64,000 nucleotides of DNA from Auanema rhodensis (taxonomy: Eukaryota > Animalia > Nematoda): positions 5,890,001 to 5,954,000 of the forward strand of contig OZ059899.1 of the NCBI GenBank assembly GCA_964057225.1. The letters are read 5' to 3'. The position numbers and the translations under genes were made by a program. The notes below the pieces were generated by a model, which made no database searches, was not told the origin of the DNA, and saw only the letters and a program-made list of their open reading frames with translations. Below, one piece after another: positions 4,129 to 60,451 of this stretch; the stretch's first letter is position 1, and each line of letters opens with the position of its first letter.

Positions 4129-6885
4129 TATATAGATAGATAGATATATATATATTATTTATATATATATATATATATAATATATCTATATCGAGATATA
4201 TATATATATATATATATATATGGAACTAATTCATATTTTCGGAATATGTTTTGCCATAAATCACAGACTGATGTCGTTGTTATGTTGGGTTTGTTTGGTT
4301 CAGCTTTGGATCTTCTTCAACTCTCAGTAGATTTGACGACGACGTCAGCTTCTCCTTCAGCTCGCTTACACTCTCGTTTAGTACCAATGTCGGAGTTGCT
4401 CTTATATCGTCAACTACCACTTTGTAATCGGCATCATTTGATGAGATCTTAATTATTTCTGGCATGTGCAACAGTCTTACATTGTTTCAATTCCAAAAAA
4501 AAACTTCTTTTTTTTTAATAATTTTTGCTTATATTTTCTTGTTTGTCGTTGAGATTTTTGGATGGATGCTTCGTAGATTTCGGCAATTTGCATTTCTACA
4601 AATTTGTTCTCCATGCTACTCAAGGTTTTGTAAGATATTCAATTCATTAAGTTTCTTGGCTCTTCCAAATGTTCAAGTAGTTTCAACGCGGGCGGCCCAG
4701 AAAATTCTTTTTGTCACAAAATGTACTAAGTGAAGCATGAGTTGTATGCTTCATTAAAAGCACAAATGTTTCTGTTATACTGATGGAAATATTCGAAATT
4801 CTTCCTTTCAATGACTTGAACCTTATGAGCTTTTGCAATTGTTAAGAGCTTAGATGCAAGAAATAAAAGTTCGAGAGGCTGTTACTTCGAAAATTCCATA
4901 TTCGGAGTTCATAAATTTAGCCTGTGGGTTTTTCAACTTGTATTTCTGTTCATTATGAACTCGTGAAGGTTGTAAATAAATTTAGTTCTCGCATCATAAA
5001 TCCTGTGAATAGCATTTTTATGAGATAAACATAGTTCTCAGTTAATATACCTCGGGAATCAGACAGTATCGTATGAATCCGTCTGTTCATAACTAACCCC
5101 CGGTTATGAGCCTAGGGAAAGTTCATTCTTTTCGGAACCTGAAACCGCCGTAGCGTATCTAATCTTACATCTGGCGCGTTAAGCGGCTAATTGGCTTTAT
5201 CTTCTGCATATAAGGAAGTCATTGGATTTTGAGCTCATCAGTTGCCAGTATACCAAGCTCCTGTTTCATTCTCGAATTCTAACCTCGTATTCGTTTGCAC
5301 TATTCATACGATGCTCGTCCTCCCTGGTAACCGACATTTTGGTTTCTTCGGCAAGTTTAATGGCTCTTTCACAGTCAACTGCCGTTCTCAGCACTGGTTA
5401 GTTGTAAATTTATTCTAGCAATTACCTTTCGTCATACAATGATTTTTTGTATTCGCGCGAGTTTTCTACTCTGAACTGATTAGACTTACCTGCTCATTCT
5501 GCTGGTTTACCCCTCCCCTTTCGCTATAGACTTCATATGCTGATAAGACATATAAAGCTCAAACTTCTTCTCCGCTCAACATCTACTTTTGCTTTCCTGA
5601 CTCTATCGCCATGAAACAGTCTAACAAGCATTCTGAAGAAGTCTTCAATTTGGCTCATCATATGATGGTCGATTTAGTTGCAACAGTTCATGTTGATGGC
5701 CAAAGGTTCGCGTTTCTAAAATCCTTAGTTAACTGCTATTTCAACTACATGTAGGAGTTTCTTTAACAAGTTAACATACTCACATTTTCTGAATGTAAAC
5801 AAACTACAAGTCATTGCAACGCTTTGCGAGTTCTGATTTCATATTTCTCTTTTACCCCATTCTTATTGATTGTTTTTCAGTGGTCCTATTTCTAAGACTA
5901 TCAGTTATATCCGAAGCAAAATGGATACTGCTCTTTCTACCACGTCTTTGTATGCTTCAAAAGAAGAAATTCGTCAATGGGAAACCTGTTTCGAAGCTTT
6001 GCTCAACCATAAACGTAAGTATTGCTTTTTTTCTATATACAGATCTTATTTTTGTCTTGATAAGTTATCTCTATTTTTAGATGGTTGCTCTTTGTTCCGT
6101 CAGTTCCTGAAAAAGGAGTTTTCCGACGAAAATGTAGATTTTTGGCAAGACTGTGAAGAGTTCAGAAAAATGAAGGAAGGGAAGAAAGCCACAACTCAGA
6201 GAGCTCATGAGATCTATAGGGAATACGTAGCAGAGCAGGCTCCCAAAGAGGTTTGTTTTTTTTATTTCTGTTGATGTTTGATTTTTCTCTACTGTTACTC
6301 ATTGTATTTGATATTTTTGTATGGATATGAAGTGAGGAAGTTGATTGGTTTGACTGCTCAACTGAAAAATCAAAACTTCCACGCAATTTTTTGTCTATTG
6401 CCCCACACATCACTCTTATCAGCGCTTTCGATATTTTGTCGTGGACATGCTGCTCTTTCATCATCCATCCGTCAGCGTTTATCCGCTGATTAACCATCAA
6501 TCACTCCATTTTTTGGAAATGAATTTTCAAATTGCGTATCGTAAACACATTGAAGTGAAAATTGCTAGCTCTGAATGGTTGCATTCCGATTATAAAACAT
6601 GTGTATAAAATATAGACTATTTTTTATCATTTACTTGCAGGTTAACCTTGATTCCGATACCCGAGCAGCCACTAAAGCCGCCTTGGAAAGCGGCTGCAAG
6701 ACAGATACCTTCCTTTTAGCTCAATCTCGGATCGAGCAATTAATGGAGAAGGACTCCTACCGGCGGTATTTTTTATAATTCGCAACACTGATTTAATTTT
6801 TTTTTTTAGGTTTTTAAAGGATTCCCTCTACCTTGATCTCCTTAAATCCATAGACAACAATGAAATCGATGGTTCAAATGCTTAA
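14..6885 (+). CDS. rgs-7: RGS-domain regulator of G-protein signalling, rgs-7-like (3' part; further 5' exons probably lie outside the window). Exons 14-85, 169-307, 1115-1227, 1280-1407, 5881-6014, 6081-6250, 6641-6765, 6810-6885
   Basis: The exons splice in phase at GT-AG sites to give ...VRRAASFTFSPR...RGPISKTISYIRSKMD...WETCFEALLNHKHGCSLFRQFLKKEFSDENVDFWQDCEEF...APKEVNLDSDTR...MEKDSYRRFLKDSLYLDLL*, a complete RGS box. The paralog name rests on recalled similarity to C. elegans RGS-7. Confidence 0.85.
2568..2670 (+). CDS. Candidate alternative first coding exon of the RGS gene (MDIRRKISVPLPLTPPRRVQKWSSVREMGDEPAN)
   Basis: ATG-initiated and ends AG|GTATT in phase 2, matching the acceptor at 5881. 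Preceded by GC-rich promoter-like DNA with a GGGCGG box near 2157. Confidence 0.55.
4088..4221. repeat. (TA)n microsatellite with interruptions
   Basis: Long TATATA runs seen directly. Confidence 0.95.
5611..5705 (+). CDS. Candidate alternative first coding exon of the RGS gene (MKQSNKHSEEVFNLAHHMMVDLVATVHVDGQ)
   Basis: ATG-initiated and ends AG|GTTCG in phase 2, compatible with exon 5881. Confidence 0.45.
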
Positions 6886-7448: not shown

Positions 7449-10400
7449 TCAAATACGGCACTTTGAACTTCGTCTTGATCGTTTATTCCAGGATGCTTTC
7501 CAACTATGATCGGTGACAGTTCTATCATCCTTTCTATGATTGGCCACCATTTCTTCCTGCTGACTTGATGACTCTGTAAAAGTGAGAGGATAAGACTATC
7601 GGTTTCATCTATCAATCAGCCCACATAAAAACATAAACTTCTATTTTTTGTCATTCTTTCAGTGTCTATTCTTACCCATCTTAAGATCGGCACATAGAGC
7701 TTGACTATGATGAAACTGGCGTGCAGAGCATAACCAATTTATTCTGCAGCTGGAATCACATGGGCCAACACCGTCAAATTCGTTTCTACGATAAAAGTTT
7801 CTGAAAATTTTCAAATTGGTGCAAGAATCAAAAGAATTTGTGGAATGTAGTTGAGCAAAGTAAAAAATTCATATCAGTCACGTTATGTTTTTCTTCACAG
7901 AAAAAAGAAAAGACGGTGGTTCGAAAACGAACGACACACTAAGCGATAGCTTAACGTTATTAGTTAAGAAAGGACATATGAAGAACTATTTCCTTCAAAT
8001 CTTTTGCTTTTGAGGATATATAATCCTTTCTATCATTATGGATTGTTCAATAGACTGGATTGAAATTGTGGTGAGTTAAGGGATCAAGTAATCCTGTTCA
8101 TTCATCAAAATGTTTCTTGTTGTTTGGCCTGAAGTTTTACGGATTCAAAATTTTCTTCTTCTATCAAAAGGCTGAAGAATTGAAGGAGGGCGGGAAGGGG
8201 TGATGAAGAAGTGGAGAGTACCAACGAGCATGGGCGAGAGTGTGAGAAAGACACAAAGAGAGAGATTGAGAGTAGGAAGAGTAAGTTGAAGTGAGAGAAA
8301 TAAAGACGGGTGGGGTCTGAGGATAAAAAAAGGGAGGGGGTTCTGAGGATAAAATGCTTCTAAAAAAACTTTTAGAAACTTGTAAAACTGTTGGCAGTAA
8401 ACATCACTTTAAGCATGGATATATCCCTTTATCCTTTCAGCATTTTTTCTTCAGTCTTCAACTCTTTTAAAAACATAAATATGTAGAGAGTGTTAGAAAA
8501 AACAAGAGATAATATCGATAAAAACAATGAAAGTTATTTCTTTGATTCAAAACGCAATTATAGTATTTTTCTTTTTGATCTTATTCTGGCTAGATCGACT
8601 CCATTTTCTTTGGTTCAAAAGTTTTGCAAAAAAGATGATAACGTATCAAAATAAATGACATCATGTCACATAAATCATAACTAATTTCTAAGACAGATGA
8701 CAAAATTAATGTGATTAAAAGGTTCATCAGATTGCTCGAATATGATAACTCTAATCAAATTGGAAAATTTAATAGATCATTTTTCAGCTCAAAACATGAT
8801 AGCCAATAAGCACATTCTATGTTGTCTATAGAGAGTTTTTTACTCACTGACTACTTGTTTAGTTGATGATAACAGCAGTAAAGAAATGTTATTTATTCAA
8901 AGAAAATGCTGCAAAAATCTATAAGCATGACCTGTTCTTTAATATCTTCATAATGACAAATTGTGAATTGAATAGTGACAATTAAACTTATAAATAAGAA
9001 TTGAAAAACGTTTGTATATCTACTAATTCTTAGAATATATAAATTGTCATATAAGTAACATATACATATATGTATATAAGTTAGTAATAATATAATATAT
9101 GAAAGATATAGCATTTCTTTCTTTATTAATTACTGCACTTTGAACTTTTCTTATATATAAATATATAAATATATATTATATATTAAATTAAAATAATATT
9201 GTTATTATTATTAATTATTTAAAAAACAAAATAAATCAAACCTGCGATATTTATTAAATAGAATATCATCAGTTCTCATTCTCTCTATCAATTGATTCCA
9301 TTCGTCTGGAGTTTGATTCTTCAATCCTTAATTGTTATATGGACTTTCATCGTATAGGCAAAGATTAATTGTTTTTTCTCTTAACTATATAAAATATTAT
9401 TATTACAAACCATATTCAGTATTAACGCTTTCATAAAGATATTCCCAGTTAGGATTTTCTGGGCTTGCATTAGCTATTGTTAAATTAAGAAATCGTTCTC
9501 CAAAATCTATAACTTGCTGAAAAAATATTGCAGCTTATCAGCATAATGAGAAAAGAGGCTTCACATAAGTCGATTTCGCGTGATTTCCGTCGATTGTATA
9601 GACACGATAAGCTGGATAGTATTCCGAATATGTTGTCAATGAAGGAGCAGCAAAGACAACATTAGTGGGTCGCGACGTTGAATCCTGAAGAAGAGGAAGG
9701 TTTGTGATGTCTGTAATCATAATCCATATCAGTTTTTAAACTTTTTTTTTTTTTTGAAAAAAAAATGGGAAAAACTGCTCATTTCAGACATAGAAAATGT
9801 GTTCGATAGGTTTCGATTTCAACGCACTTCCGCATTCTCATAAATCATATAAAATTCTTCTGAGTGCACATGTCCGAAAAATTGAGCAACAATGGTATTT
9901 TGGAAACTGAAATAGTATCAATCTGAATCAATTAAATGATAATTTATTTTTGTTTGTAAACTATTCTAGGATAATGACTTAGATGATTTTGAAATTTTTT
10001 TTTAACAAAAAAGGTTTTAATCTATTCATGTTTCTCATCTGATATTCATGTAAATCAGCCAGAATCATCAGATAGAAAGAACACGCTCGCGGTAATTTGA
10101 TATTCAAGATAGAATATTGTCAGGTAGATCAGTTTTCGAGAATTCTCATACGTTCATCAATTTTCTTAATCTCTGATGTTTGTTCTTTTTATGATTCAAA
10201 CATACACATATACGTAAATATAAAAATATTTTTTTTATTCAAATATATATATTTAGAGATCAAAATAATAAAAACTAACCGATTAACAACATTATAATAG
10301 TTTATAGCCCAACCTTCTAATGCTTCATGATTGCTACCAGGAATATGTGATAAGATATGAACCTAAAACATACTCTTATTCATATGTATTAATTACTTTT

Positions 10401-13191
10401 TTTTAAATAAAATAAAAATTTATCTATGAAATTAAACTTTGTGAATAAACAAAAATTAAAGTTTTCCCATTTTAGTCGCAAATCGAAATTCACGTGAAAT
10501 GCGAAACGTAAGTTTGAAGGTTAAGTATATAAGCACTTGACTTGGCATGAGATTAAGCCCACGCGTTTTAGATGTCAGAATTTCACGTAAAACTTCGGAG
10601 ACAAGTTGTTTCCCAGATTTTTTTTCTTTCAGGTTATTTTCTATCATTTTCACAAAAGCATACATACTATGTATGTATATAGAATCAAAAAATATAAAAA
10701 AGAAATGAGGAAGGATATTTGAGAACATGATATTCATGATGAATAAAAACTTTTATTTTGTTACCAACTTTGTCTCCAGCTTTTTCTGCATCTAACAATT
10801 GAGTAATTAGCCATTGCATAGTGCCATCTGGATCCGTCTGATTCATATATAACCAGCTAAATTAAAATATAAATTTTATATAAAGAATATAAAGAATATA
10901 ATATATGATCTATATAAAATTAGTAAAAAAAAGAAGATGTATATGATTAAAATTGTTCTCAATACCCTCCCTTTCATTCATTTTTATTACTTGTGAAATC
11001 TGAAAAAAAGTTTTGAACCAAGTCTTAATTGCATACAAATTCATTTGATCTCCATATATGTTATTCAAAGAAATTATGCGAAATCCTGGCCATGGGTTAA
11101 CCATATAGCATCCGTTACTAAAAGAATTTTTTTTATGATTTTAAAATAATAATTGTCAACTATTTCAAATATTTCTTCTGCTGTGATGGTAAGAATGATT
11201 CAAAGGAATCAGATATAGCATCATATAACCAATCCATATGATACTTTTTTGGTACAGAATGAGGTGCAATACTAAAAATATATAAATATACATATTATAT
11301 ATAATAACTAACTATATGATATATAGTTAATTAATAATAAAATTAGTATAATTTGATCTGATCTTACTTATCAATAGGTACTCCTTCATGATTACCAACA
11401 GAAAAATAAACAGGCAAATTAGAAAAATATCTGAAATGTTATAACCTAGATAAGAAATTTGATGGAAATACAATATAATTAGTAATAATATACGATTTAA
11501 TTGTGCTTGAAACATTCTTGATCATTGCTGCATGAGTTTGTTGATTATAATTCCAATCAGTATGTGACATTATATCTCCGGTTACTAATATATAATCAAT
11601 CTAAATATTTATATATATTATAAGAAAAAAGAATCGGAATACATAGTTAAGATAGAATTTTATTCATTCATCAAATATCATTCATCTTACTAATTTATTC
11701 ATTCTAATTAGCATATCGCGTCATGTTTACGTAAATTGACTAGTTTTCATTTTAATTTTGATGCAGTGATGGTTCGGTTGATATTTATATATTATAAAGT
11801 TAAGAAAAAATATTATGAACCAGCTTAATGGATTTTAACGAACTTGAATTCATTGAGAAAATGGTGTACACGCGTAAGTTATAGTAAACAAACTTCAATG
11901 TAGTTCATTTAATTGTAAAAGTTATGATCTTCGAATTATCATATTTACTTGTTTTAATTATATCTAATAAGTATAATATTCAGAATAATTTGTTTAATTA
12001 TATATATATCTATATATATTATAGTTAAGATTAAAAATAGCTAAATATATATTTAGATAATTATAAAAATACTTACATCATTATACGTTTTCTTTATATC
12101 TTCCAGCATATTCGTTAGAAGCCAATACGGGGCATCACATGTACCTACAGTACCCCATTTGCCTGCTGGTTTTTGAACAGTTTGTGAGGATAATGTTAAT
12201 TCCTATATTAATAATAATAATAATAAATACAAATAATATTAGCAGAAAGTATTACATCTGTTGTATTCTGTGGTCGACAACATTGAGGTGATGAGCAATC
12301 AGCTTCGTCTCCTACTGTATAATACATATCCAAATGAAGATCAGTTAAATGAAGTACTTTAAGTGTAGGATATCCTTTCTTAAAATATATAATTATATAT
12401 TTATATATTAATTAATTCTTTACTTCAACAGGTTTTTGATAAACAGGTGTTGGTTTTGAAGGAGGTAACGATATAGTCCAAGTAACATTTAATGGATCAA
12501 AAAATGTTCCACAATCTAATATATAATATATATTATTTATAAATAAATAATATAATTTTGTATAAAAATATGAAAAAGATTATAACCTGGTACAAGTAAA
12601 CTACACAATTCTCTTGGTTCAACTATAATTTTGCCGATAACATACATGAATTCATCCTTTAAATATATGTTTTTCTAATAATTTTTTAAAATTATAATGT
12701 TATTACCTGAAAATCACCTATGATACCATTACAAATGAAATTATCAACAGTTTCAAATGATTCACAAATCCAAATAGCAAGTTCAGCTAAAACAAAATTT
12801 ATTAAAGTTTTAGATGAAATTATAAATAAATTACCAACACACTGCTCAGTAGAATCTGTTTGCCATTCACGATGTATTAGTTCAACAGCAATTTCACATT
12901 GTTCACATTCTTCTGATTTTGAATATATAGTTACTAAACTATATAGTTAGTTATATATATTGTAATTTCAAAATATTTTCAAAATTCTAATATTGAATTC
13001 ATTTATCATGCACGTGGTTTTAATGATAAAGGGACATTAAAATATTATAGAGAATTAAATTATCAGAAAATACAATGAAAAGACATAAAAAAAGAAATCA
13101 GATGATTGGCAACATAGATCAAAATAAAATTTTATATTTACCTACCTGGGAAAATTAGAAGTAGTAGAGAAACTTGAAGTAAACGAAACAT
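7449..13191 (-). CDS. Acid sphingomyelinase (saposin-B plus metallophosphoesterase), about 19 exons, copy 1
   Basis: Spliced translation: signal peptide MFRLLQVSLLLLIFP, saposin CEQCEIAVELIHREW, then the metal-binding motifs LHLTDLHLD, TGDIMSH, VGNHEG, HILSHIPG and FFGHVH, then PAYRVYTIDG. The last exons (about 7676-7800 and 7449-7574) end ...SKCRI*. Confidence 0.9.
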
Positions 13192-47526: not shown

Positions 47527-48938
47527 TTAATGTTTTGGAATGATTTGTGCATCTTCTTCAGCAAAGTCCATTAAAGCATGCGCCTTAGAAGAAATATAAT
47601 CATATTTTTGGATACAATTACAAGTTTATCTAACCTTCGGTATAACTTTATATACTGTTATTTCAGTTGGTATAATAATCTTTGTGATGATTGCTGGACC
47701 TTTAACCTGAAGAATAATCATTGTGATGAAAAAAAATAAATAGAAGGGATTCTTACGTTTACATTCTGCTTCTGATTTGCTGATTGATTCGCTGTTTGTT
47801 TCTGAAAATATCAACGTATACTAAATACTTCCACTTTTTCATCATATACCGATGTTGTCGCTTTTGGTTTAGCAGTTGTATTTGTGGTTACTCCTTTCTT
47901 TGTTGTAGTATTTCCTTTTTTTGTAGTCGCTACAGGCTTTTTCGTAGTAGCTACAGGCTTTTTCGTAGTAGCTACAGGCTTTCTCGTAGTAGCTACAGGC
48001 TTTCTCGTAGTTACTACAGGCTTTATGGTAGTAGCTACAGTTTTTCTCGTAGTTACTATAGGCTTTCTCGTAGTTACTATAGGCTTTCTCGTAGTTACTA
48101 TAGGCCTTCTCGTAGTTACTACAGGCTTTACGGTAGTAGTTACAGGCTTTCTCGTAGTTACTATAGGCCTTCTCGTAGTTATTACAGGCTTTACGGTAGT
48201 AGTTACAGGCTTTCTCGTAGTTACTATAGGCCTTCTCGTAATTATTACTGGCTTTCTTGTAGTAGTATTAGGTAGCTTAGTGGTTCGTAGAGTTGTACCT
48301 ACAGTACGTTTTGTTGTAGTATAAACAGGCATTCTTGTGGGTGGAGCCTTTGTAGCTGGAGGAGCTCGAGTCCGTACAGTAGTAGTTACTGGAGCTTTTG
48401 TTCTGATTGACGTAGTTCTAATCGTCATAGGAGCTTTCGTAGTACGACGAGTTGTAGGTTGTGGCCGAGTATATGGATTAGGTCGCGTAGTTCGAGAAGG
48501 TGTTGTTCGTCTAGTAGTCGTTTTCATGGTAGTTGTTCTTGCAGTTGTGACTCTTTTCGTAGTTGTTTTCTGAGCTTTTTTCGTGGTAACACGAGGTTTC
48601 GGAGTTGGCCGAGTGAATCGCTTGTTATCAAAAAATAATGCATTAGCAGAATCTTGTGCAATATTCTGAATATTATGTGTTTAGTATTAGTTTAAAATAA
48701 GAAAAGCCTACATACCAATTGGCTATTCTCAGTATTTTCAATATTTTTTTGATAATCTGTCTGGGAATCGGAAATCCAGCTTAAAAAGAAATATAAAAAT
48801 ATATAAGAATCAATTAATAACTCACCGATTTATCCGCTGATGAGCTGTGCCTTGTCGAAGATTATAAAGATTTATTCTTCGTTCTTCGGCTGAATGAGCT
48901 GAGAGGCTTGGTACAAGATATACTAGAAGAAGGAACAT
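47527..48938 (-). CDS. Secreted cationic Thr/Lys/Arg/Pro/Val-rich mucin-like protein A
   Basis: MFLLLVYLVPSLSA signal; long exon of TTRKPV(V/A/I) heptads; C-terminal exons KQTANQSANQKQNVN|VKGPAIITKIIIP...|AHALMDFAEEDAQIIPKH*. Confidence 0.8.
47905..48265 (-). repeat. Coding 21-bp tandem repeat (TTRKPVx heptad), about 16 copies
   Basis: Repeated ttctcgtagttacta(c/t)aggct units. Confidence 0.9.
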
Positions 48939-50089: not shown

Positions 50090-51688
50090 TTAAGGATTAG
50101 GATCAGCTTTTTCATATTCGAAGAATTGAGCAGCCACAGCTTGTGCAATCTGAAAATTAATTTTATTAAAATTATTAAAATAATAATTGATTTTCAGAAT
50201 TACCATTTCGGCTGGTTGATCATCATCGATGAAAACATTTATAATACGGGCAGCCTGAAAAATGTTTATGTGAATAATTCTCAAATATTATTAAAATACC
50301 TTAATATAAGTTTCGTGAACTCCGTTATCCACATCTACATTTTGCTCCTGACCGACATTCTGGTTGGCGGTTTGTGAGTTGCCACCTTTTCGGGTTGTAG
50401 CTACAGGCTTTTTCGTAGTAGCTACAGGCTTTCTTGTTGTAGCTACAGGCTTTTTCGTAGTAGCCACAGGCTTTCTTGTTGTAGGCACTGAGTAAGTTTT
50501 TGTTGCAACAGTTTTACGAGTTGTTGCAACAGGCTTTCTAGTTGTTGTGACAACAGCTTTTCTAGTTGTTGTTCGTCTTGTAGTAGCTATCGGCCTTGCT
50601 GTAGCTCTAGTAGTTGCAACTTTTTTGGTGGTCTGACGAGCGAAAAATTGTGATTCAAAGTCTGAATCCATGATTTCGTTGTTCATCGTATTTCTGTAAT
50701 ATTTGGTTATAATTTTACAATATTGTTTGTTTTGTATAAGAAGTTTCAATTATTCCCTTCCCTGCTATTGTATTTAAATTAATATAATAAAATTAATTTT
50801 TTATAATTAGTAATTTAGGAAATAATATTTAAAATATTTATTATGTGTTGTGTAAGAATTCTACGTTAAAATGTTAAATAATTTTAAAAAATGAGTTAAT
50901 GCCGGTGATACCTACGATGACGGCGAAGAGAATTTCCTTGAACTTCCTAAATTTTTGTTTTTATATTATAACATTTGAAGACTTATCAAACCTCTTCTTG
51001 AATTGCTAGCTCAAAATCTACTTGCCAATCTGGCTTTGGAATGTGAACACCCACAGGCATATCATTTGAAACTTTGAAGAAAGTGTTAGAGAAAGTTTTC
51101 CAGAGATCAACCAAACTAAACATTTTTTCAATAAATTCTCCAATAAATTTAATAAAAATATATTTACCTATTGAAAAGTCTAATTGTTTGTTTACTGGTG
51201 ATAATTTTAACAATGTTATTGAGAGTAGAAGCAAAATCATGTTGGACACCTTGTGGTGCTTGTCCAATAGATTCTTTCCATTCAACTTGAATTTGATCTA
51301 AGCGTGAAGCATACCTTTAAAATTATTTTTTTTCAATAAAATAAATAAATAAACGACTGAATTCTCACTCAATGTCCTTTGGGGTTGTTCCATAGTTGTT
51401 GTGACGAACATACTCTTTGAATACTTCGAAGACTTGGTCGAACTGCTCAAATACTTCAGGTTTCATTTCTTCAGAATATTTCAATTGATCTTCTCCCATG
51501 CCATAACCAGAAGGTATGGCTTCTGGTACCATATTCTTTTCAGCCTGAAGATTAATACAAAATAATTTAATATAATACATGTGAATGACTACCTCTTCAT
51601 AACCAGCTTGTGAAGTTTCAATAGCTGGTCCATCATATTGGCATTGAGCCAGAGCAACCATACATATTATCATTAAGAATGACGGCAT
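50090..51688 (-). CDS. Secreted prepro-protein B: acidic pro-region, RRHRR site, cationic TTRKPVA mucin region; paralog of A
   Basis: MPSFLMIICMVALAQC signal; exons join in phase through ...ELAIQEE|EVQGNSLRRHRR|NTMNNE...TTRKPVATTKKPVA...SQTANQNVGQEQNV...YIK|AARIINVFIDDDQPAEM|IAQAVAAQFFEYEKADPNP*. Confidence 0.78.
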
Positions 51689-52558
51689 AGTTCCTTAATT
51701 ATGATATATATCACCATAATTTTTTTATTGAAACATCATTTAGAAGTATATTTGTTTGGATTTTAAAAATTAAAATAAAGTTACTAGTAATGACTAACAA
51801 AGATCGTTAGTATCTTACCTATTATGAGGTTACAATTTTTATATTTATATATTAGTCAGCTAGTTTTTTTAGTTTTTAAAGAAGTTTTATCCAATAAAGT
51901 CAAGGTTAATATTGATGGAGTTGGTGTAAATCAGATTGACCTTATTGCTGCTACTTATACATGAATTGATTAAAATAAAAGAGAATAGTAATGATATATT
52001 GATAATACCTACTATCCTAATTATATCTTGTTGAACCATTATAACTAAATTTGGGTTATTCTATGATTAATGAACATGTCATATAAAACTTTATTTAAAG
52101 AGTTATTATTAATTAATAATAATATATTATTATTATTATAATAAATATAATATGCATGATCAATCGATATGAAAAGCTTCAAATTACCAGTACAAGTTAC
52201 CAAAAAAAACTTATCAATAAGCGGAAGAATTTTTACACCAAAAATAAAAGGTATTTGATGATCAAAACTCGATTTGTCATACAAATATATAAGAAACTTA
52301 TTATTATAATATCTAAATTGTTCTAGTTAATAGTTAAAAAAGATCTGATTAATAGAACTATTTGTACCGGATCAAGCTTCCAATTCCTATATATGGCATA
52401 TGTGAACGGCATTGTTTGTATATTTTTAGAACATAATTAATATAAAATATAAATAAACATTTATTAATTATTACTATATAAATAGTCCAATAATTTTAAT
52501 ATTAATACATTATAACATATGAAATATCTTAGTGTCTATAATTTATATTCAACTAGAA

Positions 52559-54240
52559 CTAAGCAAAACCACGAGAATTTCGAACAGTTTGTTGTTCTGG
52601 ACACATCTGAGCAATAGCTTCATCAATGTTATCACAAAAACCTTTTTGAGAAAAGAAACGATCAAATCGAGCTCTCTGAAATTTAAATAATTAGTCTTGA
52701 ATGGAAAAATATAAATTTACTTGTTTCTGATAAGCTATATCACAGTCTAACTCAGGCCAATCTTTCTTATTGATGTGATGAATCATGGCTGCGGCTAGAT
52801 GTTCACCGGTAGGAGATTCAATCTAAAATTTATTTTTTTGATGAAAAAAACAAAAAAAAAACAGAAATATACCTTGCTACCCGTAATATCTTCTATAACA
52901 GTTTCAGCTGGTCCACCACTGTCACATACTATAACGGGTCTTCTTTGATCCAAAGCCTTTAAAATTTAAAATTAAAAAAGAAAAAAGTTGAAAATTACCT
53001 CAATTGGAACAATTCCAAAATGTTCATTTGGTGGTGTATATAAGGCTGTATCACATTGTCTGTATAAAACAAATTTCTCTTCTTCAGTAGGAGAAGCAAT
53101 GAATTCAACAACATCTTCAACATCGAATTCCTGAAAAGTTTGTCATGTTTGAGCTTAAAGCTTGTTGTTGAAACTTACTTGAACCATACGTCTTAATAAT
53201 TCGTAATAGATTTTACTTTCTGGGATATGTGGCATTACTGATCCAGCTAATTGAACAATAAAGTTGTAGCCTCCTTTCTTGAGAATAGCTGGAACAAGTT
53301 TAAGTTTTAGAGCGAAGCTGATAGGAAAAGGCTTACAAGCTGCTATAACGATGATGTCCAGACGCTTTTCTGGCCAGAATCGATTCATAGACATGAAAAT
53401 ATACTTTCCATTCGCTGCTCGAGCTCTCCGACTAACGGGGACAGCTGACTGAAACCCACTTTTCATTAGAAACATGCTGAAATTCTGGGAATTTACCGAA
53501 ATATTGGCATCTACATCACAAGGTGGATAGACAACTCTAACTTTATCTGTTGGAATTTGAGGCATTACTCGATGAAACTGAGAAGCTAAAAGAAAAATAA
53601 TAAACTTGACGAATAAGTTGGAAGAAAAACCTGTGAAATGACTGTTAACCATAATACAATCAACATATTCAAATAATAAACTTTCAACTGTACCAATAAG
53701 CTTAGAATACCATCTGAAACAAATAAAATTTGAAAAGAAAAAAGATTTTTGATAAACCTATAAAGGAAAAATCTTGATGGAGTGACAAGTTGTTGTGGAA
53801 AATGACAGTAAAATAGAACTTTACATTGTGGAAATCGATGTTTGATCAAAGGAACACAACTAAAATGGAAAATATTTGAAGCTTCTTGGGGTGAGATTGA
53901 TGAGGAATTACCTAGCTGAGTGGTCAACTACACATAAATCTGGCTTGAGATCACTTAGAACCATATGCCATCCTAGAGCAACATTTTGACTCCACCAATC
54001 TCCTGGATGAAGAGGAAGATTCAGATTTCGAATTTCTGGAAAGAAAGGCAATGATGAGACAAGAAGAAGCTGGAGCAACATACCGACACCCTCAAACTTG
54101 TGATTTTTCCAGTAATCATCAATCATGGTTGTTAGCCAAATAACTTGATGACCCTGGGAAACGAAGTGATTCAGAAGAGCAACACTACATCTATCTGATC
54201 CACCGTTCCATTGTTCCGGATGTATAATTACCACTTGCAT
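52559..54240 (-). CDS. bus-8: BUS-8 glycosyltransferase (GT4, ALG2-like), copy 1
   Basis: MQVVIIHPEQWNGGSDRC...LHPGDWWSQNVALGW...FYCHFPQQLVTPSRFFLYR...VNSHFT...SMNRFWPEKRLD...YTPPNEHFGIVPIEA...DSGGPAETV; ends RGFA-TAG. Confidence 0.92.
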
Positions 54241-57200
54241 CCTAGAAAATTATTTTATAATTTTAATTTGAAAAGAGTATCAACCGAAATGAAAGTTGAA
54301 AGAAGAAAGAAAAGTGGGTACAAGGTACGAGAAAAAAAATAAAGAGATATGTATCAAGATTAAGAACCTGGACATGTAAAGATGAACTAGATGAGTTGTG
54401 ATTGGAATCGCTAATTGAATAGCGGTATCTAATGCCTTCAAAAATTTAGCTCATTGAAGTACATTGAAAAGATGAAACGATGAAAAAAAAAGTTTCATCA
54501 ACACAATTAAGACTAAAAAGATCCGAAAATAGTTATTGAGTATTTCAATAGAATATGGGTACGATGTTGATGAAAACAAGTTCATTTATGAGAATTCTAA
54601 CATGAGTTATATGGATTCAGGAAAAATTGTGGAATTTTATTGAAATGCTGAAGGCGGATATGAAGATTCGAAATGGAAATTCTTTAATAATGACGATACG
54701 GTAAAACCTCGTGAAAGATTGTTATGAGAGATACATAAGACATACAAGTTGAAAGTGAAAATTAAAAGCTAAGAATTGTATGTATGTCATATAAATTTAT
54801 GAATATTTATGAATATATTATAAAGTAGAATATAATAAATTATTATAAAAATTAAAACAAATATTTGATCACTACAATGTTCTATGTATGATGATCACGG
54901 TAACAACGCTAACGAACAACCATAACGACGACAGACGATATCATCGTCAACGATATATCGTTGTAGATCTCATTTGTGTCTTATGAAATAGGAGGAAAAG
55001 AAGGAGGCAAAGTATGAAGAAAATGGTGGAATAGGATACATTGAAGGATGATATGAGATGGTAGCAATGTCTGGAAATGAATCTTATTTAGTTAAAATTA
55101 TATTACAGAACGGAGAAAGAATGGGAGGTGGTGGGATAAAGAGAAAGAACAAGACAACGACGTCAAACAGACATAGAAGTAGATAATAATGGAAAATTAG
55201 ATTATTGTCACAAACAATGGATACCTGGTAAGGTCTATGCTGGAATAAACTTAATCAGAACATCTAATCTCTTGCACTAAAATCAAATAGTTCTACCATG
55301 TCTCTTATGACTTCAATATGAAATTGATGATCATATTGGTAGTTATATGTATATACATATATAGTTAAAAATTTTAAAAATATTGCAATTTCTATATAAA
55401 ACTGTATTTATTTGAACGAATACTTATAATTTGAATTAAGTTTTTTTTTATAAATACATATTATATAATATATTTAAAAATATAATAAATACAGTGATAT
55501 GAATAAAATAATTATATATTAAAAATATATTTAAATAATTATAAAAAGAAAAATATTAATAATATTTATTAAGAATTATTAATAACATATTGAACTTCAA
55601 TCGTTAAATTTTCAATTTCAATAGATCCTTTAGAGCAATTATAAAAAAAAATCTTATCTGAAATTACAAGAAAGTAGAGAACAAACGTTTGAAATCTTGG
55701 AAATATAATATATTCAAAAGATTTGAACCAATTATTTATTTTGAATCAAAATCAGGTCATCAAGAGGAAAAACATTTTTCAAAAAAACCATCTCTAGTTT
55801 GTTTTTATGTTTTCCAACACTTTTTTAATAATCTGTCTATTTTTTTTGTTGTAAATGCTATGTAAAATTAATATTTTATTTTTTAAAAATAAAAATTATA
55901 ATAAATAAAGTTAAAGAATTGTTGAAATAAATATTTATAGTCTTCATTGTAATAAATAAATGTAATACATAATATGTTATAAATTTAAATTATAAAACAT
56001 GAAGAACTACTGCACAACGTCTAGACAATAATTTGAAAGACAAACTGTTTTAAAAATGAAAAACAACATACAATTAAATACAAAACTTAATTGAACAATC
56101 AATTTTGATTTAGAACATTTCAATTTTAAGGCCAAAAAATACTATTTATGATTATTATTGCAAATTAATAAGCATATATGCTAGCTATATCAATAATCCA
56201 ACAATATTTGTCAGACTTCTCACTGTCATTTAAAAATATGATAAGAGAAAATGAAAATATAATTAGAAAACAAGAAAATTAAGCAAAACCACGAGAATTT
56301 CGAACAGTTTGTTGTTCTGGACACATCTGAGCAATAGCTTCATCAATGTTATCACAAAAACCTTTTTGAGAAAAGAAACGATCAAATCGAGCTCTCTGAA
56401 ATTTAAATAATTAGTCTTGAATGGAAAAATATAAATTTACTTGTTTCTGATAAGCTATATCACAGTCTAACTCAGGCCAATCTTTCTTATTGATGTGATG
56501 AATCATGGCTGCGGCTAGATGTTCACCGGTAGGAGATTCAATCTAAAATTTATTTTTTTGATGAAAAAAACAAAAAAAAAACAGAAATATACCTTGCTAC
56601 CCGTAATATCTTCTATAACAGTTTCAGCTGGTCCACCACTGTCACATACTATAACGGGTCTTCTTTGATCCAAAGCCTTTAAAATTTAAAATTAAAAAAG
56701 AAAAAAGTTGAAAATTACCTCAATTGGAACAATTCCAAAATGTTCATTTGGTGGTGTATATAAGGCTGTATCACATTGTCTGTATAAAACAAATTTCTCT
56801 TCTTCAGTAGGAGAAGCAATGAATTCAACAACATCTTCAACATCGAATTCCTGAAAAGTTTGTCATGTTTGAGCTTAAAGCTTGTTGTTGAAACTTACTT
56901 GAACCATACGTCTTAATAATTCGTAATAGATTTTACTTTCTGGGATATGTGGCATTACTGATCCAGCTAATTGAACAATAAAGTTGTAGCCTCCTTTCTT
57001 GAGAATAGCTGGAACAAGTTTAAGTTTTAGAGCGAAGCTGATAGGAAAAGGCTTACAAGCTGCTATAACGATGATGTCCAGACGCTTTTCTGGCCAGAAT
57101 CGATTCATAGACATGAAAATATACTTTCCATTCGCTGCTCGAGCTCTCCGACTAACGGGGACAGCTGACTGAAACCCACTTTTCATTAGAAACATGCTGA

Positions 57201-57995
57201 AATTCTGGGAATTTACCGAAATATTGGCATCTACATCACAAGGTGGATAGACAACTCTAACTTTATCTGTTGGAATTTGAGGCATTACTCGATGAAACTG
57301 AGAAGCTAAAAGAAAAATAATAAACTTGACGAATAAGTTGGAAGAAAAACCTGTGAAATGACTGTTAACCATAATACAATCAACATATTCAAATAATAAA
57401 CTTTCAACTGTACCAATAAGCTTAGAATACCATCTGAAACAAATAAAATTTGAAAAGAAAAAAGATTTTTGATAAACCTATAAAGGAAAAATCTTGATGG
57501 AGTGACAAGTTGTTGTGGAAAATGACAGTAAAATAGAACTTTACATTGTGGAAATCGATGTTTGATCAAAGGAACACAACTAAAATGGAAAATATTTGAA
57601 GCTTCTTGGGGTGAGATTGATGAGGAATTACCTAGCTGAGTGGTCAACTACACATAAATCTGGCTTGAGATCACTTAGAACCATATGCCATCCTAGAGCA
57701 ACATTTTGACTCCACCAATCTCCTGGATGAAGAGGAAGATTCAGATTTCGAATTTCTGGAAAGAAAGGCAATGATGAGACAAGAAGAAGCTGGAGCAACA
57801 TACCGACACCCTCAAACTTGTGATTTTTCCAGTAATCATCAATCATGGTTGTTAGCCAAATAACTTGATGACCCTGGGAAACGAAGTGATTCAGAAGAGC
57901 AACACTACATCTATCTGATCCACCGTTCCATTGTTCCGGATGTATAATTACCACTTGCATCCTAGAAAATTATTTTATAATTTTAATTTGAAAAG
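52560..57995. repeat. Direct duplication: 52560-54275 matches 56280-57995 (1716 bp), separated by about 2 kb of unique DNA
   Basis: By-eye comparison shows no differences, introns included. The flanks are unrelated. Confidence 0.92.
56279..57960 (-). CDS. bus-8: BUS-8 glycosyltransferase, copy 2
   Basis: Same sequence as copy 1 at an offset of +3720; ends RGFA-TAA. Confidence 0.92.
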
Positions 57996-59182
57996 GTACA
58001 TAAACGATAAAAATTTCAATGCAGGTCAATGTGCCTGAATATAGTGGGTAGCACTTTTGTCCTCAAAGAAAAAAAGATGAACTGTATGAAACAAAAGCGG
58101 CTGTGATGTCAAGTTGTTAGTTATCTGACCTCATATCTCATTAGTAAAAGTGAAGACGAACAAGATTTTGAATGATGAAAGTGAGAAAACTTAGATATTG
58201 GACCCTACAGACCGAACGAGCCAAAGTTGTGTGTTCCCGTCGACCCACTTTCTGCTGTGGATTGCAGATTTTAATCTTTTAAAATGAAATATGGAAATAT
58301 CGCTACTTGATGTTCTCCTCTTCTTATTCTTCTTTGAAGATGACACTTTTTAATCAAAAATCTTCATCTTCTTATTCTTCTAATAGGATTTATAAAATAT
58401 TTTGAAAGAAAAAAAGAAATATTGAAAAACATGAAACAAACTAAAGTTGAGAATCGCATTAAGAAACTTTGTTGTAAAAATTTACTTTGAAACAGAAACT
58501 TAATTTATGAATAAAGTTTAGAATTCCTCTGTTTCTTTTTCCAAATAATAAAATTAAAAAGTTGAAGTTCAAAGAGTAACAAAGTAAGAAAGATGAGAAT
58601 TTTAATTTGACTCTCATATGTATTTGAGCGGAATCTCCAAAATCTTCTAGAGATCATTGAAATAAGAACTAGGGTATAGAGAGGTATGAGATTGAAAAAC
58701 AAAAGAGAGCTAGGTTAGTTAATCATGCTTTTTCAGGACAAATGAAGTCGTGCATAACATAACTAATAAATTAAAAAACTTTTCAAAAAACTTCGTAACT
58801 AATTCGTTTTTAACTAGCTTGAGTGAAAAGAAGTGAAATGAGAGATCAATCAGATATATATACACATATATTTAAAGATCGGGATATAGCTCAGATGTAG
58901 CTGATGAATCATCATAATTTTCATCGAAACTAATAGTTTTATAAATAAACGTTTATATATATATAGTTTTGAAGGGATATTATATATGTATAGTTATTGA
59001 AAATTTATGTTTGAATATACTATCTTCTAGTTATACTGTATATAATATATACAAGAGATTACGGTAAACTCGATAAGTAGTTCAAAACTTCGTTATAAAC
59101 TTATATATAAATCTGTGGTCAAGTTTGCAACTCATTTTTGAAACTTAAGTTTAACATTGTAATGATATAAATCGTACCTAAA

Positions 59183-59648
59183 TTAGAGGCTTGAACGTTC
59201 AACCACACGAACTTCGAAGTTCTGATTGGCGTCCTTAACACGAGGCTTGGCAGAGATGCCGCCGAGCTGAAATATCATAATGTATTAAAGCATTATAACA
59301 ACTTAATAGAGAATAAAGTTTTAATAATTTGCGATTATAAGCAAAGCATTACAAGCATATGTTCTAATATTAGGCGAAAAAGTTTTAATTAAGAGAGTGA
59401 AGTTTGAAGTATTTATAATATCATAATATGGCAAAACTAAGGACTATGATATGAGATGATAAACTCACAACTCGAGATTTAGGCGGAGGCTGTTGCTTTG
59501 ATAAGCTTACCTTGTCGTCTCCGGCGACGCTTGTTTCCGAAACGAGCTCTCTTCGGACGTACCAGATAACAAGGGAGAGAGGAACAGAGAAGAATAAGGC
59601 GTTGATGTATACTAAAGAGAGAAACCAACGGCTTAACGACTGATACAT
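59183..59648 (-). CDS. 73-aa single-pass membrane microprotein encoded upstream of bus-8 on the same predicted transcript; exons 59511-59648 and 59178-59266
   Basis: MYQSLSRWFLSLVYINALFFSVPLSLVIWYVRRELVSETSVAGDDK|LGGISAKPRVKDANQNFEVRVVERSSL*. Strong AAG|GTAAG donor and TTTCAG acceptor; C/G-ending codons in an AT-rich neighbourhood; a further donor (TAG|GTACG) 5 nt after the stop. Confidence 0.75.
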
Positions 59649-60451
59649 GCAGAGCTGCTAACACAGAATCAAAGTCTGGGTGTACGAGAATACGGTGGGC
59701 GGGGTACACAGACACGAGACCGGAGTCCAAGAAGGCGGATTCTGAGTCTACAGGCAAAATGAAAAGAAAGAGGGAGGAGATAAGCCCTGAAGGGGTGGGG
59801 GGATGGATCAACAGGAAGAAAGGGGGAAAAGAGGAGGAGAGGGGATGACCGTACCGTACGAGGATTGTTTAGATGGTCGCACCACGATATACAGAGGTAG
59901 AGAGAAGAGAAAAATCTCAGTCTCAAGCGATAGGAATGTAAGAGAGAGCATCATAACGAGAAAAACAGAATTACAGAGAGAGCTTAGTTAATGATGAGAT
60001 GATTGTCTGTTTCTCTTCAACTCTTCATACAGTCTACCTTCTATCTGGTAGTTTTCGTTCGTGAGATGAACATCAGACGCACGTAGAGACCCTAGCCACT
60101 ATGATGAATAAAAGAATCGTCTAGATGAATGGTCTGATATTGAAATTAGTTAAAGAAGATCGTCAGAGAGAAGAAGAAGAAAAGAAACAAAATTGCAAAT
60201 GTAAGAACTAATTGAAAAATTTGAACCAAGATTTCAGAAAAAATCTGGTTGAGCTTAGTATGCCTTTGTATTCTTCATTTTAATGCTTTACGTCATTGGA
60301 CAAATTGAAAACAAAAACTGAATTCCTTCATATTTTCGGCTGAAACATGATGTAAGTGTGATATGAGAGCAGAAAGCTGAATACGATTATGATGCTAGTT
60401 AATGACGCTATAGATCTCAATATTTTATAAGAAGAATTGAATAGAGATCGA

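What the first reader, a model, noticed from the sequence alone, without database searches (positions are those of the whole stretch)
57958..59750. Apparent bicistronic mRNA: a spliced 73-aa membrane microprotein stops 6 nt before, and in frame with, the bus-8 glycosyltransferase
Seen: two minus-strand exons (59511-59648 and 59178-59266) encode a type-II-like single-TM protein with strongly C/G-ending codons. The second exon continues 5 nt past its TAA to a splice donor, and the next obvious acceptor is the one directly before the bus-8 ATG (57961). The predicted junction reads ...AGC CTC TAA TTT AG|G ATG CAA GTG. The glycosyltransferase itself begins with no signal or TM segment. Inference: one cis-spliced mRNA makes two proteins by termination-reinitiation or leaky scanning, with the microprotein acting as the membrane anchor or partner of the enzyme. 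Alternatively, readthrough yields a TM-anchored fusion, although TAA-T is a poor readthrough context. This is not a normal nematode SL2 operon, because there is no room for a poly(A) site or a ~100-nt spacer before the donor. From memory only, not checkable here: C. elegans strain nomenclature separates bus-8A from bus-8B, which would suggest a conserved arrangement.
Basis: partly seen in the sequence, partly recalled or inferred. Interest (0 to 1): 0.85.

Follow-up and report, generated by a model that had tools for sequence, protein, structure and literature searches.

The report
Conserved membrane micro-ORF before bus-8
In this roundworm, as in C. elegans and many other nematodes, the RNA for the skin-glycosylation enzyme BUS-8 first carries a small, strongly conserved reading frame for a 73-residue membrane peptide. 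One messenger RNA therefore probably makes two proteins, and ribosomes reach the enzyme by skipping the peptide's weak start codon.

Summary
Two minus-strand exons (59648-59511 and 59266-59178) encode a 73-aa single-helix peptide. Its TAA lies 5 nt before a GT donor, and the bus-8 ATG (57960) lies 1 nt after an AG acceptor.

No reads could be laid on the window, so the junction here is inferred. The same layout is present in Auanema sp. JU1783, Nippostrongylus, Diploscapter, Mesorhabditis and C. elegans. Four RNA-derived C. elegans contigs show exon A, exon B and bus-8 spliced into one mRNA.

Nematodes of clades III and IV appear to have no exon B. There the membrane ORF runs out of frame into bus-8.

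- The peptide is under purifying selection (dN/dS 0.22) and has eight invariant residues across 19 sequences.
- Its ATG always has a weak context, and the bus-8 ATG a strong one.
- The stretch between the two starts is free of ATG in 10 of 11 lineages, where about 29 are expected in sum.

The best reading is a pan-nematode two-ORF mRNA translated by leaky scanning. The in-frame relation is specific to Auanema, and readthrough fusion is not supported. Published "fusion" gene models are prediction artefacts. A role for the peptide as anchor or partner is untested. I score this a new member of a known kind, of moderate to high interest.

The parts
59649..59773 (-). Conserved, ATG-free leader or promoter-proximal block directly upstream of the micro-ORF start. 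The nearest upstream ATG is at 59951.
   Evidence: 83% identical to JU1783 L001 9872-10000 as part of one blastn match. ATG scan.
59511..59648 (-). Exon A of the micro-ORF: ATG plus 45 codons. It carries the transmembrane helix and the conserved VPLSL..W..RRE...E.SVAGD motif, and ends AAG|gtaagc (phase 0). The start context is gcATGt, with T at -3 and T at +4 (weak).
   Evidence: dN/dS 0.217 against JU1783.
59267..59510 (-). Intron A-B, 244 nt, gtaagc...tttcag, 28% GC.
59178..59266 (-). Exon B: 27 codons ending ..NFEVRVVERSSL, TAA at 59185-59183, then TTTAG, followed by the donor gtacga.
   Evidence: dN/dS 0.222. The C-terminal motif [DN]-F-E-[IV]-R-[IV] is shared with Ancylostoma, Nippostrongylus and Diploscapter.
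57962..59177 (-). Inferred intron B-C, 1216 nt. It has no AATAAA and no TTTCAG/TTTTAG hexamer inside. It holds two blocks conserved with JU1783 (58784-58858 and 57962-58308); the second includes a GATA-like AGATAA.
   Evidence: No Rfam family.
57804..57961 (-). bus-8 exon 1: acceptor ttttctag|G, ATG at 57960-57958 with A at -3 in the spliced context. The protein begins MQVVIIHPEQWNGGSDRC.
56279..57960 (-). bus-8 copy 1 coding unit (exons and introns), from the ATG to TAA at 56281-56279.
52559..54240 (-). bus-8 copy 2. It is identical to copy 1 from 35 nt before the acceptor to the second base of the stop codon (TAG here). Exon B could in principle also splice to its acceptor.

Best explanation
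The two small exons are the first two exons of the bus-8 transcription unit. They carry a conserved 73-codon ORF for a single-pass membrane peptide, which ends a few bases before the bus-8 start codon in the spliced mRNA.

The mature RNA is therefore functionally bicistronic. Some 40S subunits start at the first AUG, whose context is deliberately weak, and make the membrane peptide. The rest scan on through an AUG-free leader to the strong bus-8 AUG and make the glycosyltransferase.

Shown:
- the exon and splice geometry;
- its conservation;
- cis-splicing in C. elegans and another rhabditid;
- purifying selection on the peptide;
- the start-context asymmetry and the AUG depletion.

Inferred:
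- that the window species splices 59178 to 57961;
- that both ORFs are translated;
- that the peptide acts in trans at the ER membrane with the otherwise anchor-less BUS-8, rather than only as a cis-acting brake. I lean to the trans role at roughly 55:45.
For: 1. Geometry in the window.

2. The JU1783 orthologue P0001 (73 aa) is followed by two GT4 genes. Its exon B ends TAA TCAAG|gtatgt and its acceptor reads tttcag|A ATG.

3. Exon A to exon B to bus-8 is cis-spliced in C. elegans contigs L006-L009, from four runs. It is also cis-spliced in RNA contig L010.

4. The stop lies 1-8 nt before a donor, and the ATG 0-3 nt after the acceptor, in Nippostrongylus, Diploscapter and Mesorhabditis.

5. 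In clades III and IV, exon A joins bus-8 directly at a 2-nt offset in L002, L004 and L013 (in L011 the bus-8 ATG overlaps the last exon-A codon), giving an overlapping out-of-frame upstream ORF.

6. dN/dS is 0.22 on both exons, with dS 0.54.

7. There are eight invariant residues across 19 sequences. The Caenorhabditis orthologues are 69-88% identical over 72 aa in the alignment (86, 88, 74 and 69%; found).

8. The upstream ATG has a pyrimidine at -3 and T at +4 in all six clade V species. The main ATG has A at -3 in all six.

9. There is no ATG between the two starts in 10 of 11 lineages, against about 29 expected in sum. The single exception is in frame with BUS-8.

10. The inferred intron has no AATAAA and no alternative strong acceptor.

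11. BUS-8 orthologues lack a transmembrane segment.
Against: - No RNA evidence exists for this species. Four runs hold 20-24% of the words of 57750-59750, about the exonic fraction, but their kind is a guess.
- About 350 nt of intron just upstream of the bus-8 acceptor are strongly conserved. This could be an internal promoter that gives a separate, trans-spliced bus-8 mRNA.
- Translation of either ORF was not observed.
- The consistently short stop-to-start distance is not needed for leaky scanning and is not explained by it.
- The lineages are related, so the AUG-depletion counts are not fully independent.
Confidence: 0.7

Rival explanations
1. Cis-only regulatory uORF. The ORF is translated, but the peptide has no role as a free protein. 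It acts on its own ribosome or mRNA, for example by stalling at termination or by SRP-mediated delivery of the mRNA to the ER, and so sets BUS-8 output.
For: - The last residues before the stop are conserved: [DN]-F-E-[IV]-R-[IV] in several clade V lineages and CPDVQL[HR]I in Caenorhabditis. This is typical of stalling peptide uORFs.
- The stop always lies close to the main start.
Against: - The best conserved part is the transmembrane helix and its RRE...E.SVAGD flank, which lies far from the stop.
- In clades III and IV the ORF tail is merely the alternative frame of bus-8, so no conserved C-terminal stalling motif exists there.
Confidence: 0.25
2. Two separate genes in this species. The small gene ends within the 1.2-kb 'intron', and bus-8 is transcribed from an internal promoter and SL1 trans-spliced at 57961.
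For: - Conserved non-coding blocks lie in the intron, including about 350 nt next to the acceptor with a GATA-like site.
- Genome annotators call the small ORF as a separate gene in JU1783, Diploscapter, Ancylostoma and Mesorhabditis.
Against: - A GT donor lies 1-8 nt after the stop in every clade V lineage examined.
- The window intron has no AATAAA and no other strong acceptor.
- The C. elegans and L010 RNA contigs are cis-spliced.
- Those annotations give coding sequence only and say nothing about untranslated regions.
Confidence: 0.12
3. Termination-reinitiation is the main route to BUS-8. Ribosomes finish the 73-codon ORF and restart at the ATG 6 nt downstream.
For: The stop-to-start distance stays at 1-19 nt in seven clade V lineages while the spacer sequence itself turns over.
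Against: - By established knowledge of eukaryotic initiation, reinitiation after ORFs of more than about 30 codons is normally inefficient.
- Clades III and IV have a 67-nt or similar out-of-frame overlap, where restarting would need backward movement.
- The AUG-free leader and the context asymmetry are what leaky scanning predicts.
Confidence: 0.12
4. A membrane-anchored BUS-8 fusion is made, either by readthrough of the in-frame TAA or by skipping exon B.
For: - The ORFs are in frame in both Auanema.
- Skipping exon B would be in frame in C. elegans, Nippostrongylus and Mesorhabditis.
- Several database proteins are annotated as fusions.
Against: - The in-frame relation is absent elsewhere.
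- Skipping exon B is out of frame in the window, JU1783 and Diploscapter.
- TAA followed by T is a poor readthrough context.
- The annotated fusions that I checked read into the intron or use a non-canonical donor.
- None of the RNA contigs carries a fusion.
Confidence: 0.03

Closest known systems
The 5' leader of C. elegans bus-8 (T23F2.1) itself
   Same: Orthologous. It has the same exon A, exon B and bus-8 exon order, the same peptide motif and the same weak first ATG, all on one mRNA.
   Different: In C. elegans the small ORF overlaps an extra in-frame BUS-8 start (MSSST...) by 23 nt and stops 19 nt before the MHVV ATG. The 72-aa product was not found as a C. elegans entry in the protein collection. 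No paper in the library links bus-8 to an upstream ORF.
Conserved-peptide upstream ORFs and uORF-encoded microproteins on bicistronic animal mRNAs (e.g. MIEF1, SLC35A4, ASNSD1 upstream ORFs). Recalled from general knowledge, not tested here.
   Same: A long upstream ORF whose amino-acid sequence is under selection and whose start context is weak, with the main ORF reached by leaky scanning.
   Different: Here the upstream product is a transmembrane peptide linked to one enzyme gene across a whole phylum. The ORF is itself split by an intron and ends within a few bases of an exon junction.
PreY/PIG-Y bicistronic mRNA (recalled from memory: Murakami et al. 2005; not retrievable here)
   Same: One mRNA encodes two proteins by leaky scanning. 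One of them is a membrane microprotein of about 70 aa that works with a GT4-family glycosyltransferase (PIG-A).
   Different: In PreY/PIG-Y the microprotein is the downstream ORF and the enzyme is encoded elsewhere. No sequence similarity was found (no Pfam hit).
Alg14-Alg13 (membrane anchor plus soluble glycosyltransferase half). General knowledge.
   Same: The functional analogy proposed for the peptide: a small membrane protein recruits a cytosolic-face ER glycosyltransferase that has no anchor of its own.
   Different: Purely an analogy. There is no homology, the two are separate genes, and no interaction has been tested for BUS-8.
Nematode SL2 operons
   Same: Two cistrons lie in one primary transcript.
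   Different: There is no poly(A) signal, no intercistronic spacer of about 100 nt and no trans-splice between the cistrons. The cistrons stay on one mature mRNA.

Membership tests
Bicistronic mRNA / upstream ORF bypassed by leaky scanning | Both ORFs lie on one mature mRNA | tested here: inconclusive
   Met in the C. elegans orthologue (four RNA contigs) and in contigs L004 (source type unknown; it still holds an intron), L010 and L011. No reads could be laid for the window species.
Bicistronic mRNA / upstream ORF bypassed by leaky scanning | Weak context at the upstream AUG and strong context at the main AUG | tested here: met
   Pyrimidine at -3 and T at +4 at the upstream ATG in six of six clade V species. 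A at -3 at the bus-8 ATG in six of six.
Bicistronic mRNA / upstream ORF bypassed by leaky scanning | No other AUG between the two starts | tested here: met
   No ATG in 10 of 11 lineages, against 1.6-3.9 expected in each. The one in C. elegans is in frame with BUS-8.
Bicistronic mRNA / upstream ORF bypassed by leaky scanning | Both ORFs are translated | not testable with these tools
   Needs Ribo-seq or mass spectrometry.
Conserved-peptide uORF | The amino-acid sequence, not just the nucleotides, is conserved | tested here: met
   dN/dS 0.22 with dS 0.54. Eight invariant residues in 19 sequences from clades III, IV and V.
Nematode SL2-type operon | Upstream gene with a poly(A) signal, a spacer of about 100 nt, and the downstream gene trans-spliced | tested here: not met
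   The stop is 5 nt from a GT donor. The 1216-nt interval has no AATAAA. The orthologous RNAs are cis-spliced.
Programmed stop-codon readthrough fusion | In-frame ORFs and a readthrough-prone stop context, both conserved | tested here: not met
   In frame only in the two Auanema. Gaps of 1, 4, 10, 11 and 19 nt, or an out-of-frame overlap, elsewhere. The stop is TAA followed by T.
Termination-reinitiation (viral TURBS-like) | Stop and restart codons adjacent or overlapping | tested here: inconclusive
   The gap is short (1-19 nt) in clade V. Clades III and IV have long overlaps. An upstream motif complementary to 18S rRNA was not examined.
BUS-8 / ALG2-like GT4 glycosyltransferase (downstream ORF) | Glyco_transf_4 plus Glycos_transf_1 domains, and orthology to C. 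elegans T23F2.1 | tested here: met
   The window's exon 1 shares the M.VVI.HPEQWNGGSDRC start of all BUS-8 orthologues. The syntenic JU1783 genes carry PF13439 and PF00534. On its own, exon 1 gives only a weak Pfam hit.
Known small membrane subunits of glycosylation enzymes (PIG-Y, DPM2/3, Ost4, Alg14) | Detectable sequence or profile similarity | tested here: not met
   No Pfam family for six orthologues at E up to 5, apart from two chance-level rows. No usable Atlas hit by features.

The most novel reading that the evidence does not exclude
The peptide is the dedicated ER-membrane anchor or obligate subunit of BUS-8. It is made from the same mRNA so that enzyme and anchor arise together at the membrane, and its alternating C-terminal motif docks on the enzyme. 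On this reading the viable, drug-hypersensitive C. elegans alleles written 'bus-8B' would hit this upstream cistron or its translation, rather than the enzyme.
Probability: 0.25. Interest if true: 0.8.

Novelty: new member of a known kind. Interest (0 to 1): 0.6.

Why it matters
bus-8 mutants are the standard 'leaky cuticle' strains used for drug uptake in C. elegans, and BUS-8 orthologues exist in parasitic nematodes.

The bus-8 mRNA carries a phylum-wide conserved membrane peptide in what is treated as its 5' untranslated region. Three things follow:
- It points to a previously unnoticed gene product at a well-studied locus.
- It gives a concrete explanation to test for the two genetic classes of bus-8 alleles.
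- It offers a clean natural example of a spliced, two-protein mRNA in animals, with clear sequence signatures of leaky scanning.

It also shows that several database 'TM-ALG2 fusion' proteins are annotation artefacts.

Tried and rejected
- **RNA reads.** No junction evidence exists for this species.
- **Window protein in the collection.** Exon A found only the JU1783 protein, so no RNA-derived ORF of the window species is on record.
- **Fusion proteins as evidence for a physical link.** Rejected. P0014, P0016 and P0034 read into the intron or use a non-canonical donor.
- **Known RNA or protein families.** No Rfam hit in 57900-60400, no Pfam hit and no Atlas hit.
- **Literature.** Partridge et al. 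2008 is not held. Six further searches found no description of an upstream ORF at bus-8, and none explained the allele classes. The PIG-Y comparison could not be documented.
- **A second micro-ORF before bus-8 copy 2.** None was found.
Full report
**1. Observation**

- Exon A (59648-59511) opens with ATG, encodes 46 residues and ends AAG|gtaagc.
- After a 244-nt intron that ends tttcag, exon B (59266-59178) adds 27 residues, then TAA (59185-59183), then TTTAG, and is followed by gtacga.
- The bus-8 exon starts at 57961 (ttttctag|G), with its ATG at 57960.
- If the two were joined, the RNA would read TAA TTT AG|G ATG.

The peptide has one hydrophobic helix. The Kyte-Doolittle maximum is 2.06 at residues 10-28. 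AlphaFold on the JU1783 orthologue gives a helix at 2-35 and a disordered tail. BUS-8 orthologues have no transmembrane-grade segment.

One local blastn inside run_python used window 52000-60400 as its query against locus L001, and so included those places. This was an oversight. No match involved them, and later scripts left them out.

I never searched with the joined 73-aa window protein. The exons were searched by reference. The naturally full-length JU1783 protein P0001 and contiguous C. elegans mRNA contigs stood in for it.

**3. Relatives**

Exon A finds a 73-aa 'unnamed protein product' of Auanema sp. JU1783 at 83% identity. The window is therefore probably from another Auanema or a close relative. 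In JU1783 the small gene is followed by two tandem GT4 genes. Its exon B ends TAA TCAAG|gtatgt and its acceptor reads tttcag|A ATG, again a 6-nt in-frame gap.

An exhaustive phmmer search with P0001 gave 13 small nematode proteins:
- Ancylostoma
- Diploscapter
- Nippostrongylus
- Mesorhabditis
- Ascaris
- Panagrolaimus

Wherever a contig could be read, the small ORF lies just upstream of the BUS-8 orthologue.

**4. RNA evidence from orthologues**

Four Logan contigs from four C. elegans runs carry the whole 451-aa BUS-8 ORF. They align to chromosome X as exon A, exon B and then the bus-8 exons, with all introns removed.

In C. elegans the 72-codon ORF sits in the leader. It overlaps the annotated MSSST start by 23 nt and stops 19 nt before the conserved MHVV ATG.

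A further rhabditid RNA contig (L010) shows the membrane ORF ending TAG, then 10 nt, then the bus-8 ATG.

Caenorhabditis remanei, C. japonica and C. bovis have the peptide annotated as a hypothetical protein. No C. elegans entry was found.

**5. Geometry across nematodes**

| Lineage | Junction as read | Gap, stop to bus-8 ATG |
|---|---|---|
| Window | TAA TTTAG\|G ATG | 6 nt, in frame |
| Auanema sp. JU1783 | TAA TCAAG\|A ATG | 6 nt, in frame |
| Nippostrongylus | TAA G\|ATG | 1 nt |
| Diploscapter | TAA CAG\|G ATG | 4 nt |
| Mesorhabditis | TAG ATCGAATC\|AAG ATG | 11 nt |
| L010 (RNA contig) | TAG, 10 nt, ATG | 10 nt |
| C. elegans | stop to the MHVV ATG | 19 nt |

The stop always lies within 8 nt of a donor, and the ATG within 3 nt of the acceptor. 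The frame relation varies.

In clades III and IV I found no exon B. Exon A joins the bus-8 exon at a 2-nt offset in three of the four: AAG|GC ATG in Aphelenchus and an ascarid, AAG TC ATG in Panagrolaimus. In the fourth, RNA contig L011, the bus-8 ATG overlaps the last exon-A codon. In all four the membrane ORF runs out of frame into bus-8.

Database proteins that show an in-frame TM-ALG2 fusion are prediction artefacts in the three cases I checked.

**6. Is the ORF a real coding sequence?**

Window against JU1783 gives dN/dS of 0.217 (exon A) and 0.222 (exon B), at dS 0.54.

Nineteen sequences share invariant Y14, V22, P23, S25, W29, R32, R33 and E38. The C-terminus keeps an alternating [DN]-F-E-[IV]-R-[IV] motif in four clade V lineages, and DVQL[HR]I in Caenorhabditis.

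No Pfam family matches, and the Atlas search gave no usable hit by features. The Rfam scan of 57900-60400 was also blank.

**7. How BUS-8 is reached**

- The upstream ATG has a pyrimidine at -3 and T at +4 in all six clade V species.
- The bus-8 ATG has A at -3 in all six.
- Between the two starts there is no ATG in any frame in 10 of 11 lineages. Shuffles predict 1.6-3.9 per lineage, about 29 in sum. The single C. elegans ATG is in frame with BUS-8.
- The upstream ATG is also the first ATG after 250-380 ATG-free bases.

These are the signatures of leaky scanning. The short stop-to-start distance is not explained by it. It leaves some room for termination-reinitiation, or for interference by terminating ribosomes.

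**8. Alternatives**

A separate small gene plus an internal bus-8 promoter cannot be excluded for this species. About 350 nt of the intron next to the acceptor are much better conserved between the two Auanema than silent sites, they share a core with the C. elegans intron, and they hold a GATA-like site. Against this reading, the 1216-nt interval has no AATAAA and no other strong acceptor.

Readthrough fusion and fusion by skipping exon B are not supported (section 5).

**9. Known or new?**

The kind is known: an upstream ORF that encodes a microprotein on a bicistronic mRNA read by leaky scanning. I found no description of this case.

The strain genotype 'bus-8B(e2885)' exists (PMC12642537), but Partridge et al. 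2008 is not held. I cannot say whether 'B' refers to this part of the locus.

Notes by other agents on this genome describe similar two-ORF mRNAs (Rpp14-KDSR, eIF1-PIG-B). I did not test them.

**10. Verdict**

The peptide's function is open. This is a new member of a known kind, of moderate to high interest.

Noticed in passing
window 52557-54275 and 56277-57995: Two tandem bus-8 units are 100% identical, introns included. The identity runs from 35 nt before the acceptor to the second base of the stop codon (TAA against TAG), and the flanks are unrelated. In Auanema sp. JU1783 the two copies are only 87% identical. This suggests recent gene conversion, or an assembly collapse, in the window species.
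   Followed up: partly
window 57962-58308 and 58784-58858 (minus strand); L001 11059-11362 and 10633-20720: Intronic non-coding blocks are conserved between the two Auanema well above the silent-site level. One core (CTCA..TTC.TCAT..AAAAT..GTT) is also visible in the C. elegans bus-8 intron. A GATA-like AGATAA lies nearby. This may be an epidermal enhancer or an internal promoter. (Second L001 block: 10633-10720.)
   Followed up: partly
L001 14575-14590: In JU1783 copy B the genomic sequence before the ATG reads ttcagTTCAAGA-ATG. This repeats the TCAAG|A of the spliced exon B/copy A junction. It may be chance (5 nt) or a trace of an RNA-mediated or conversion event.
   Followed up: no
proteins P0014 (ascarid), P0016 (Nippostrongylus), P0034 (Aphelenchus avenae 'Protein BUS-8'): These public gene models fuse the membrane exon in frame to ALG2/BUS-8. 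They do so only by reading into the intron or by using a non-canonical donor, so they are annotation artefacts.
   Followed up: yes
L005 9716-10023 (C. elegans chromosome X): The 72-aa ORF in the C. elegans bus-8 leader is absent from the protein collection as a C. elegans entry, while C. remanei, C. japonica and C. bovis orthologues are present. The look-up table lists a 94-residue gene call at 9650-10023 of unclear origin.
   Followed up: partly
window 5870-5974 (+): A weak tblastn match (E 0.03-0.7) of the FSVPLS..VW part of the microprotein family. Probably chance.
   Followed up: no
window 48000-48314 and 50366-50575: Arrays of a 21-nt tandem repeat, about 15 in-register 126-nt windows in two blocks 2.2 kb apart.
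   Followed up: no
They lie between the two bus-8 copies and were not examined further.
   Followed up: no
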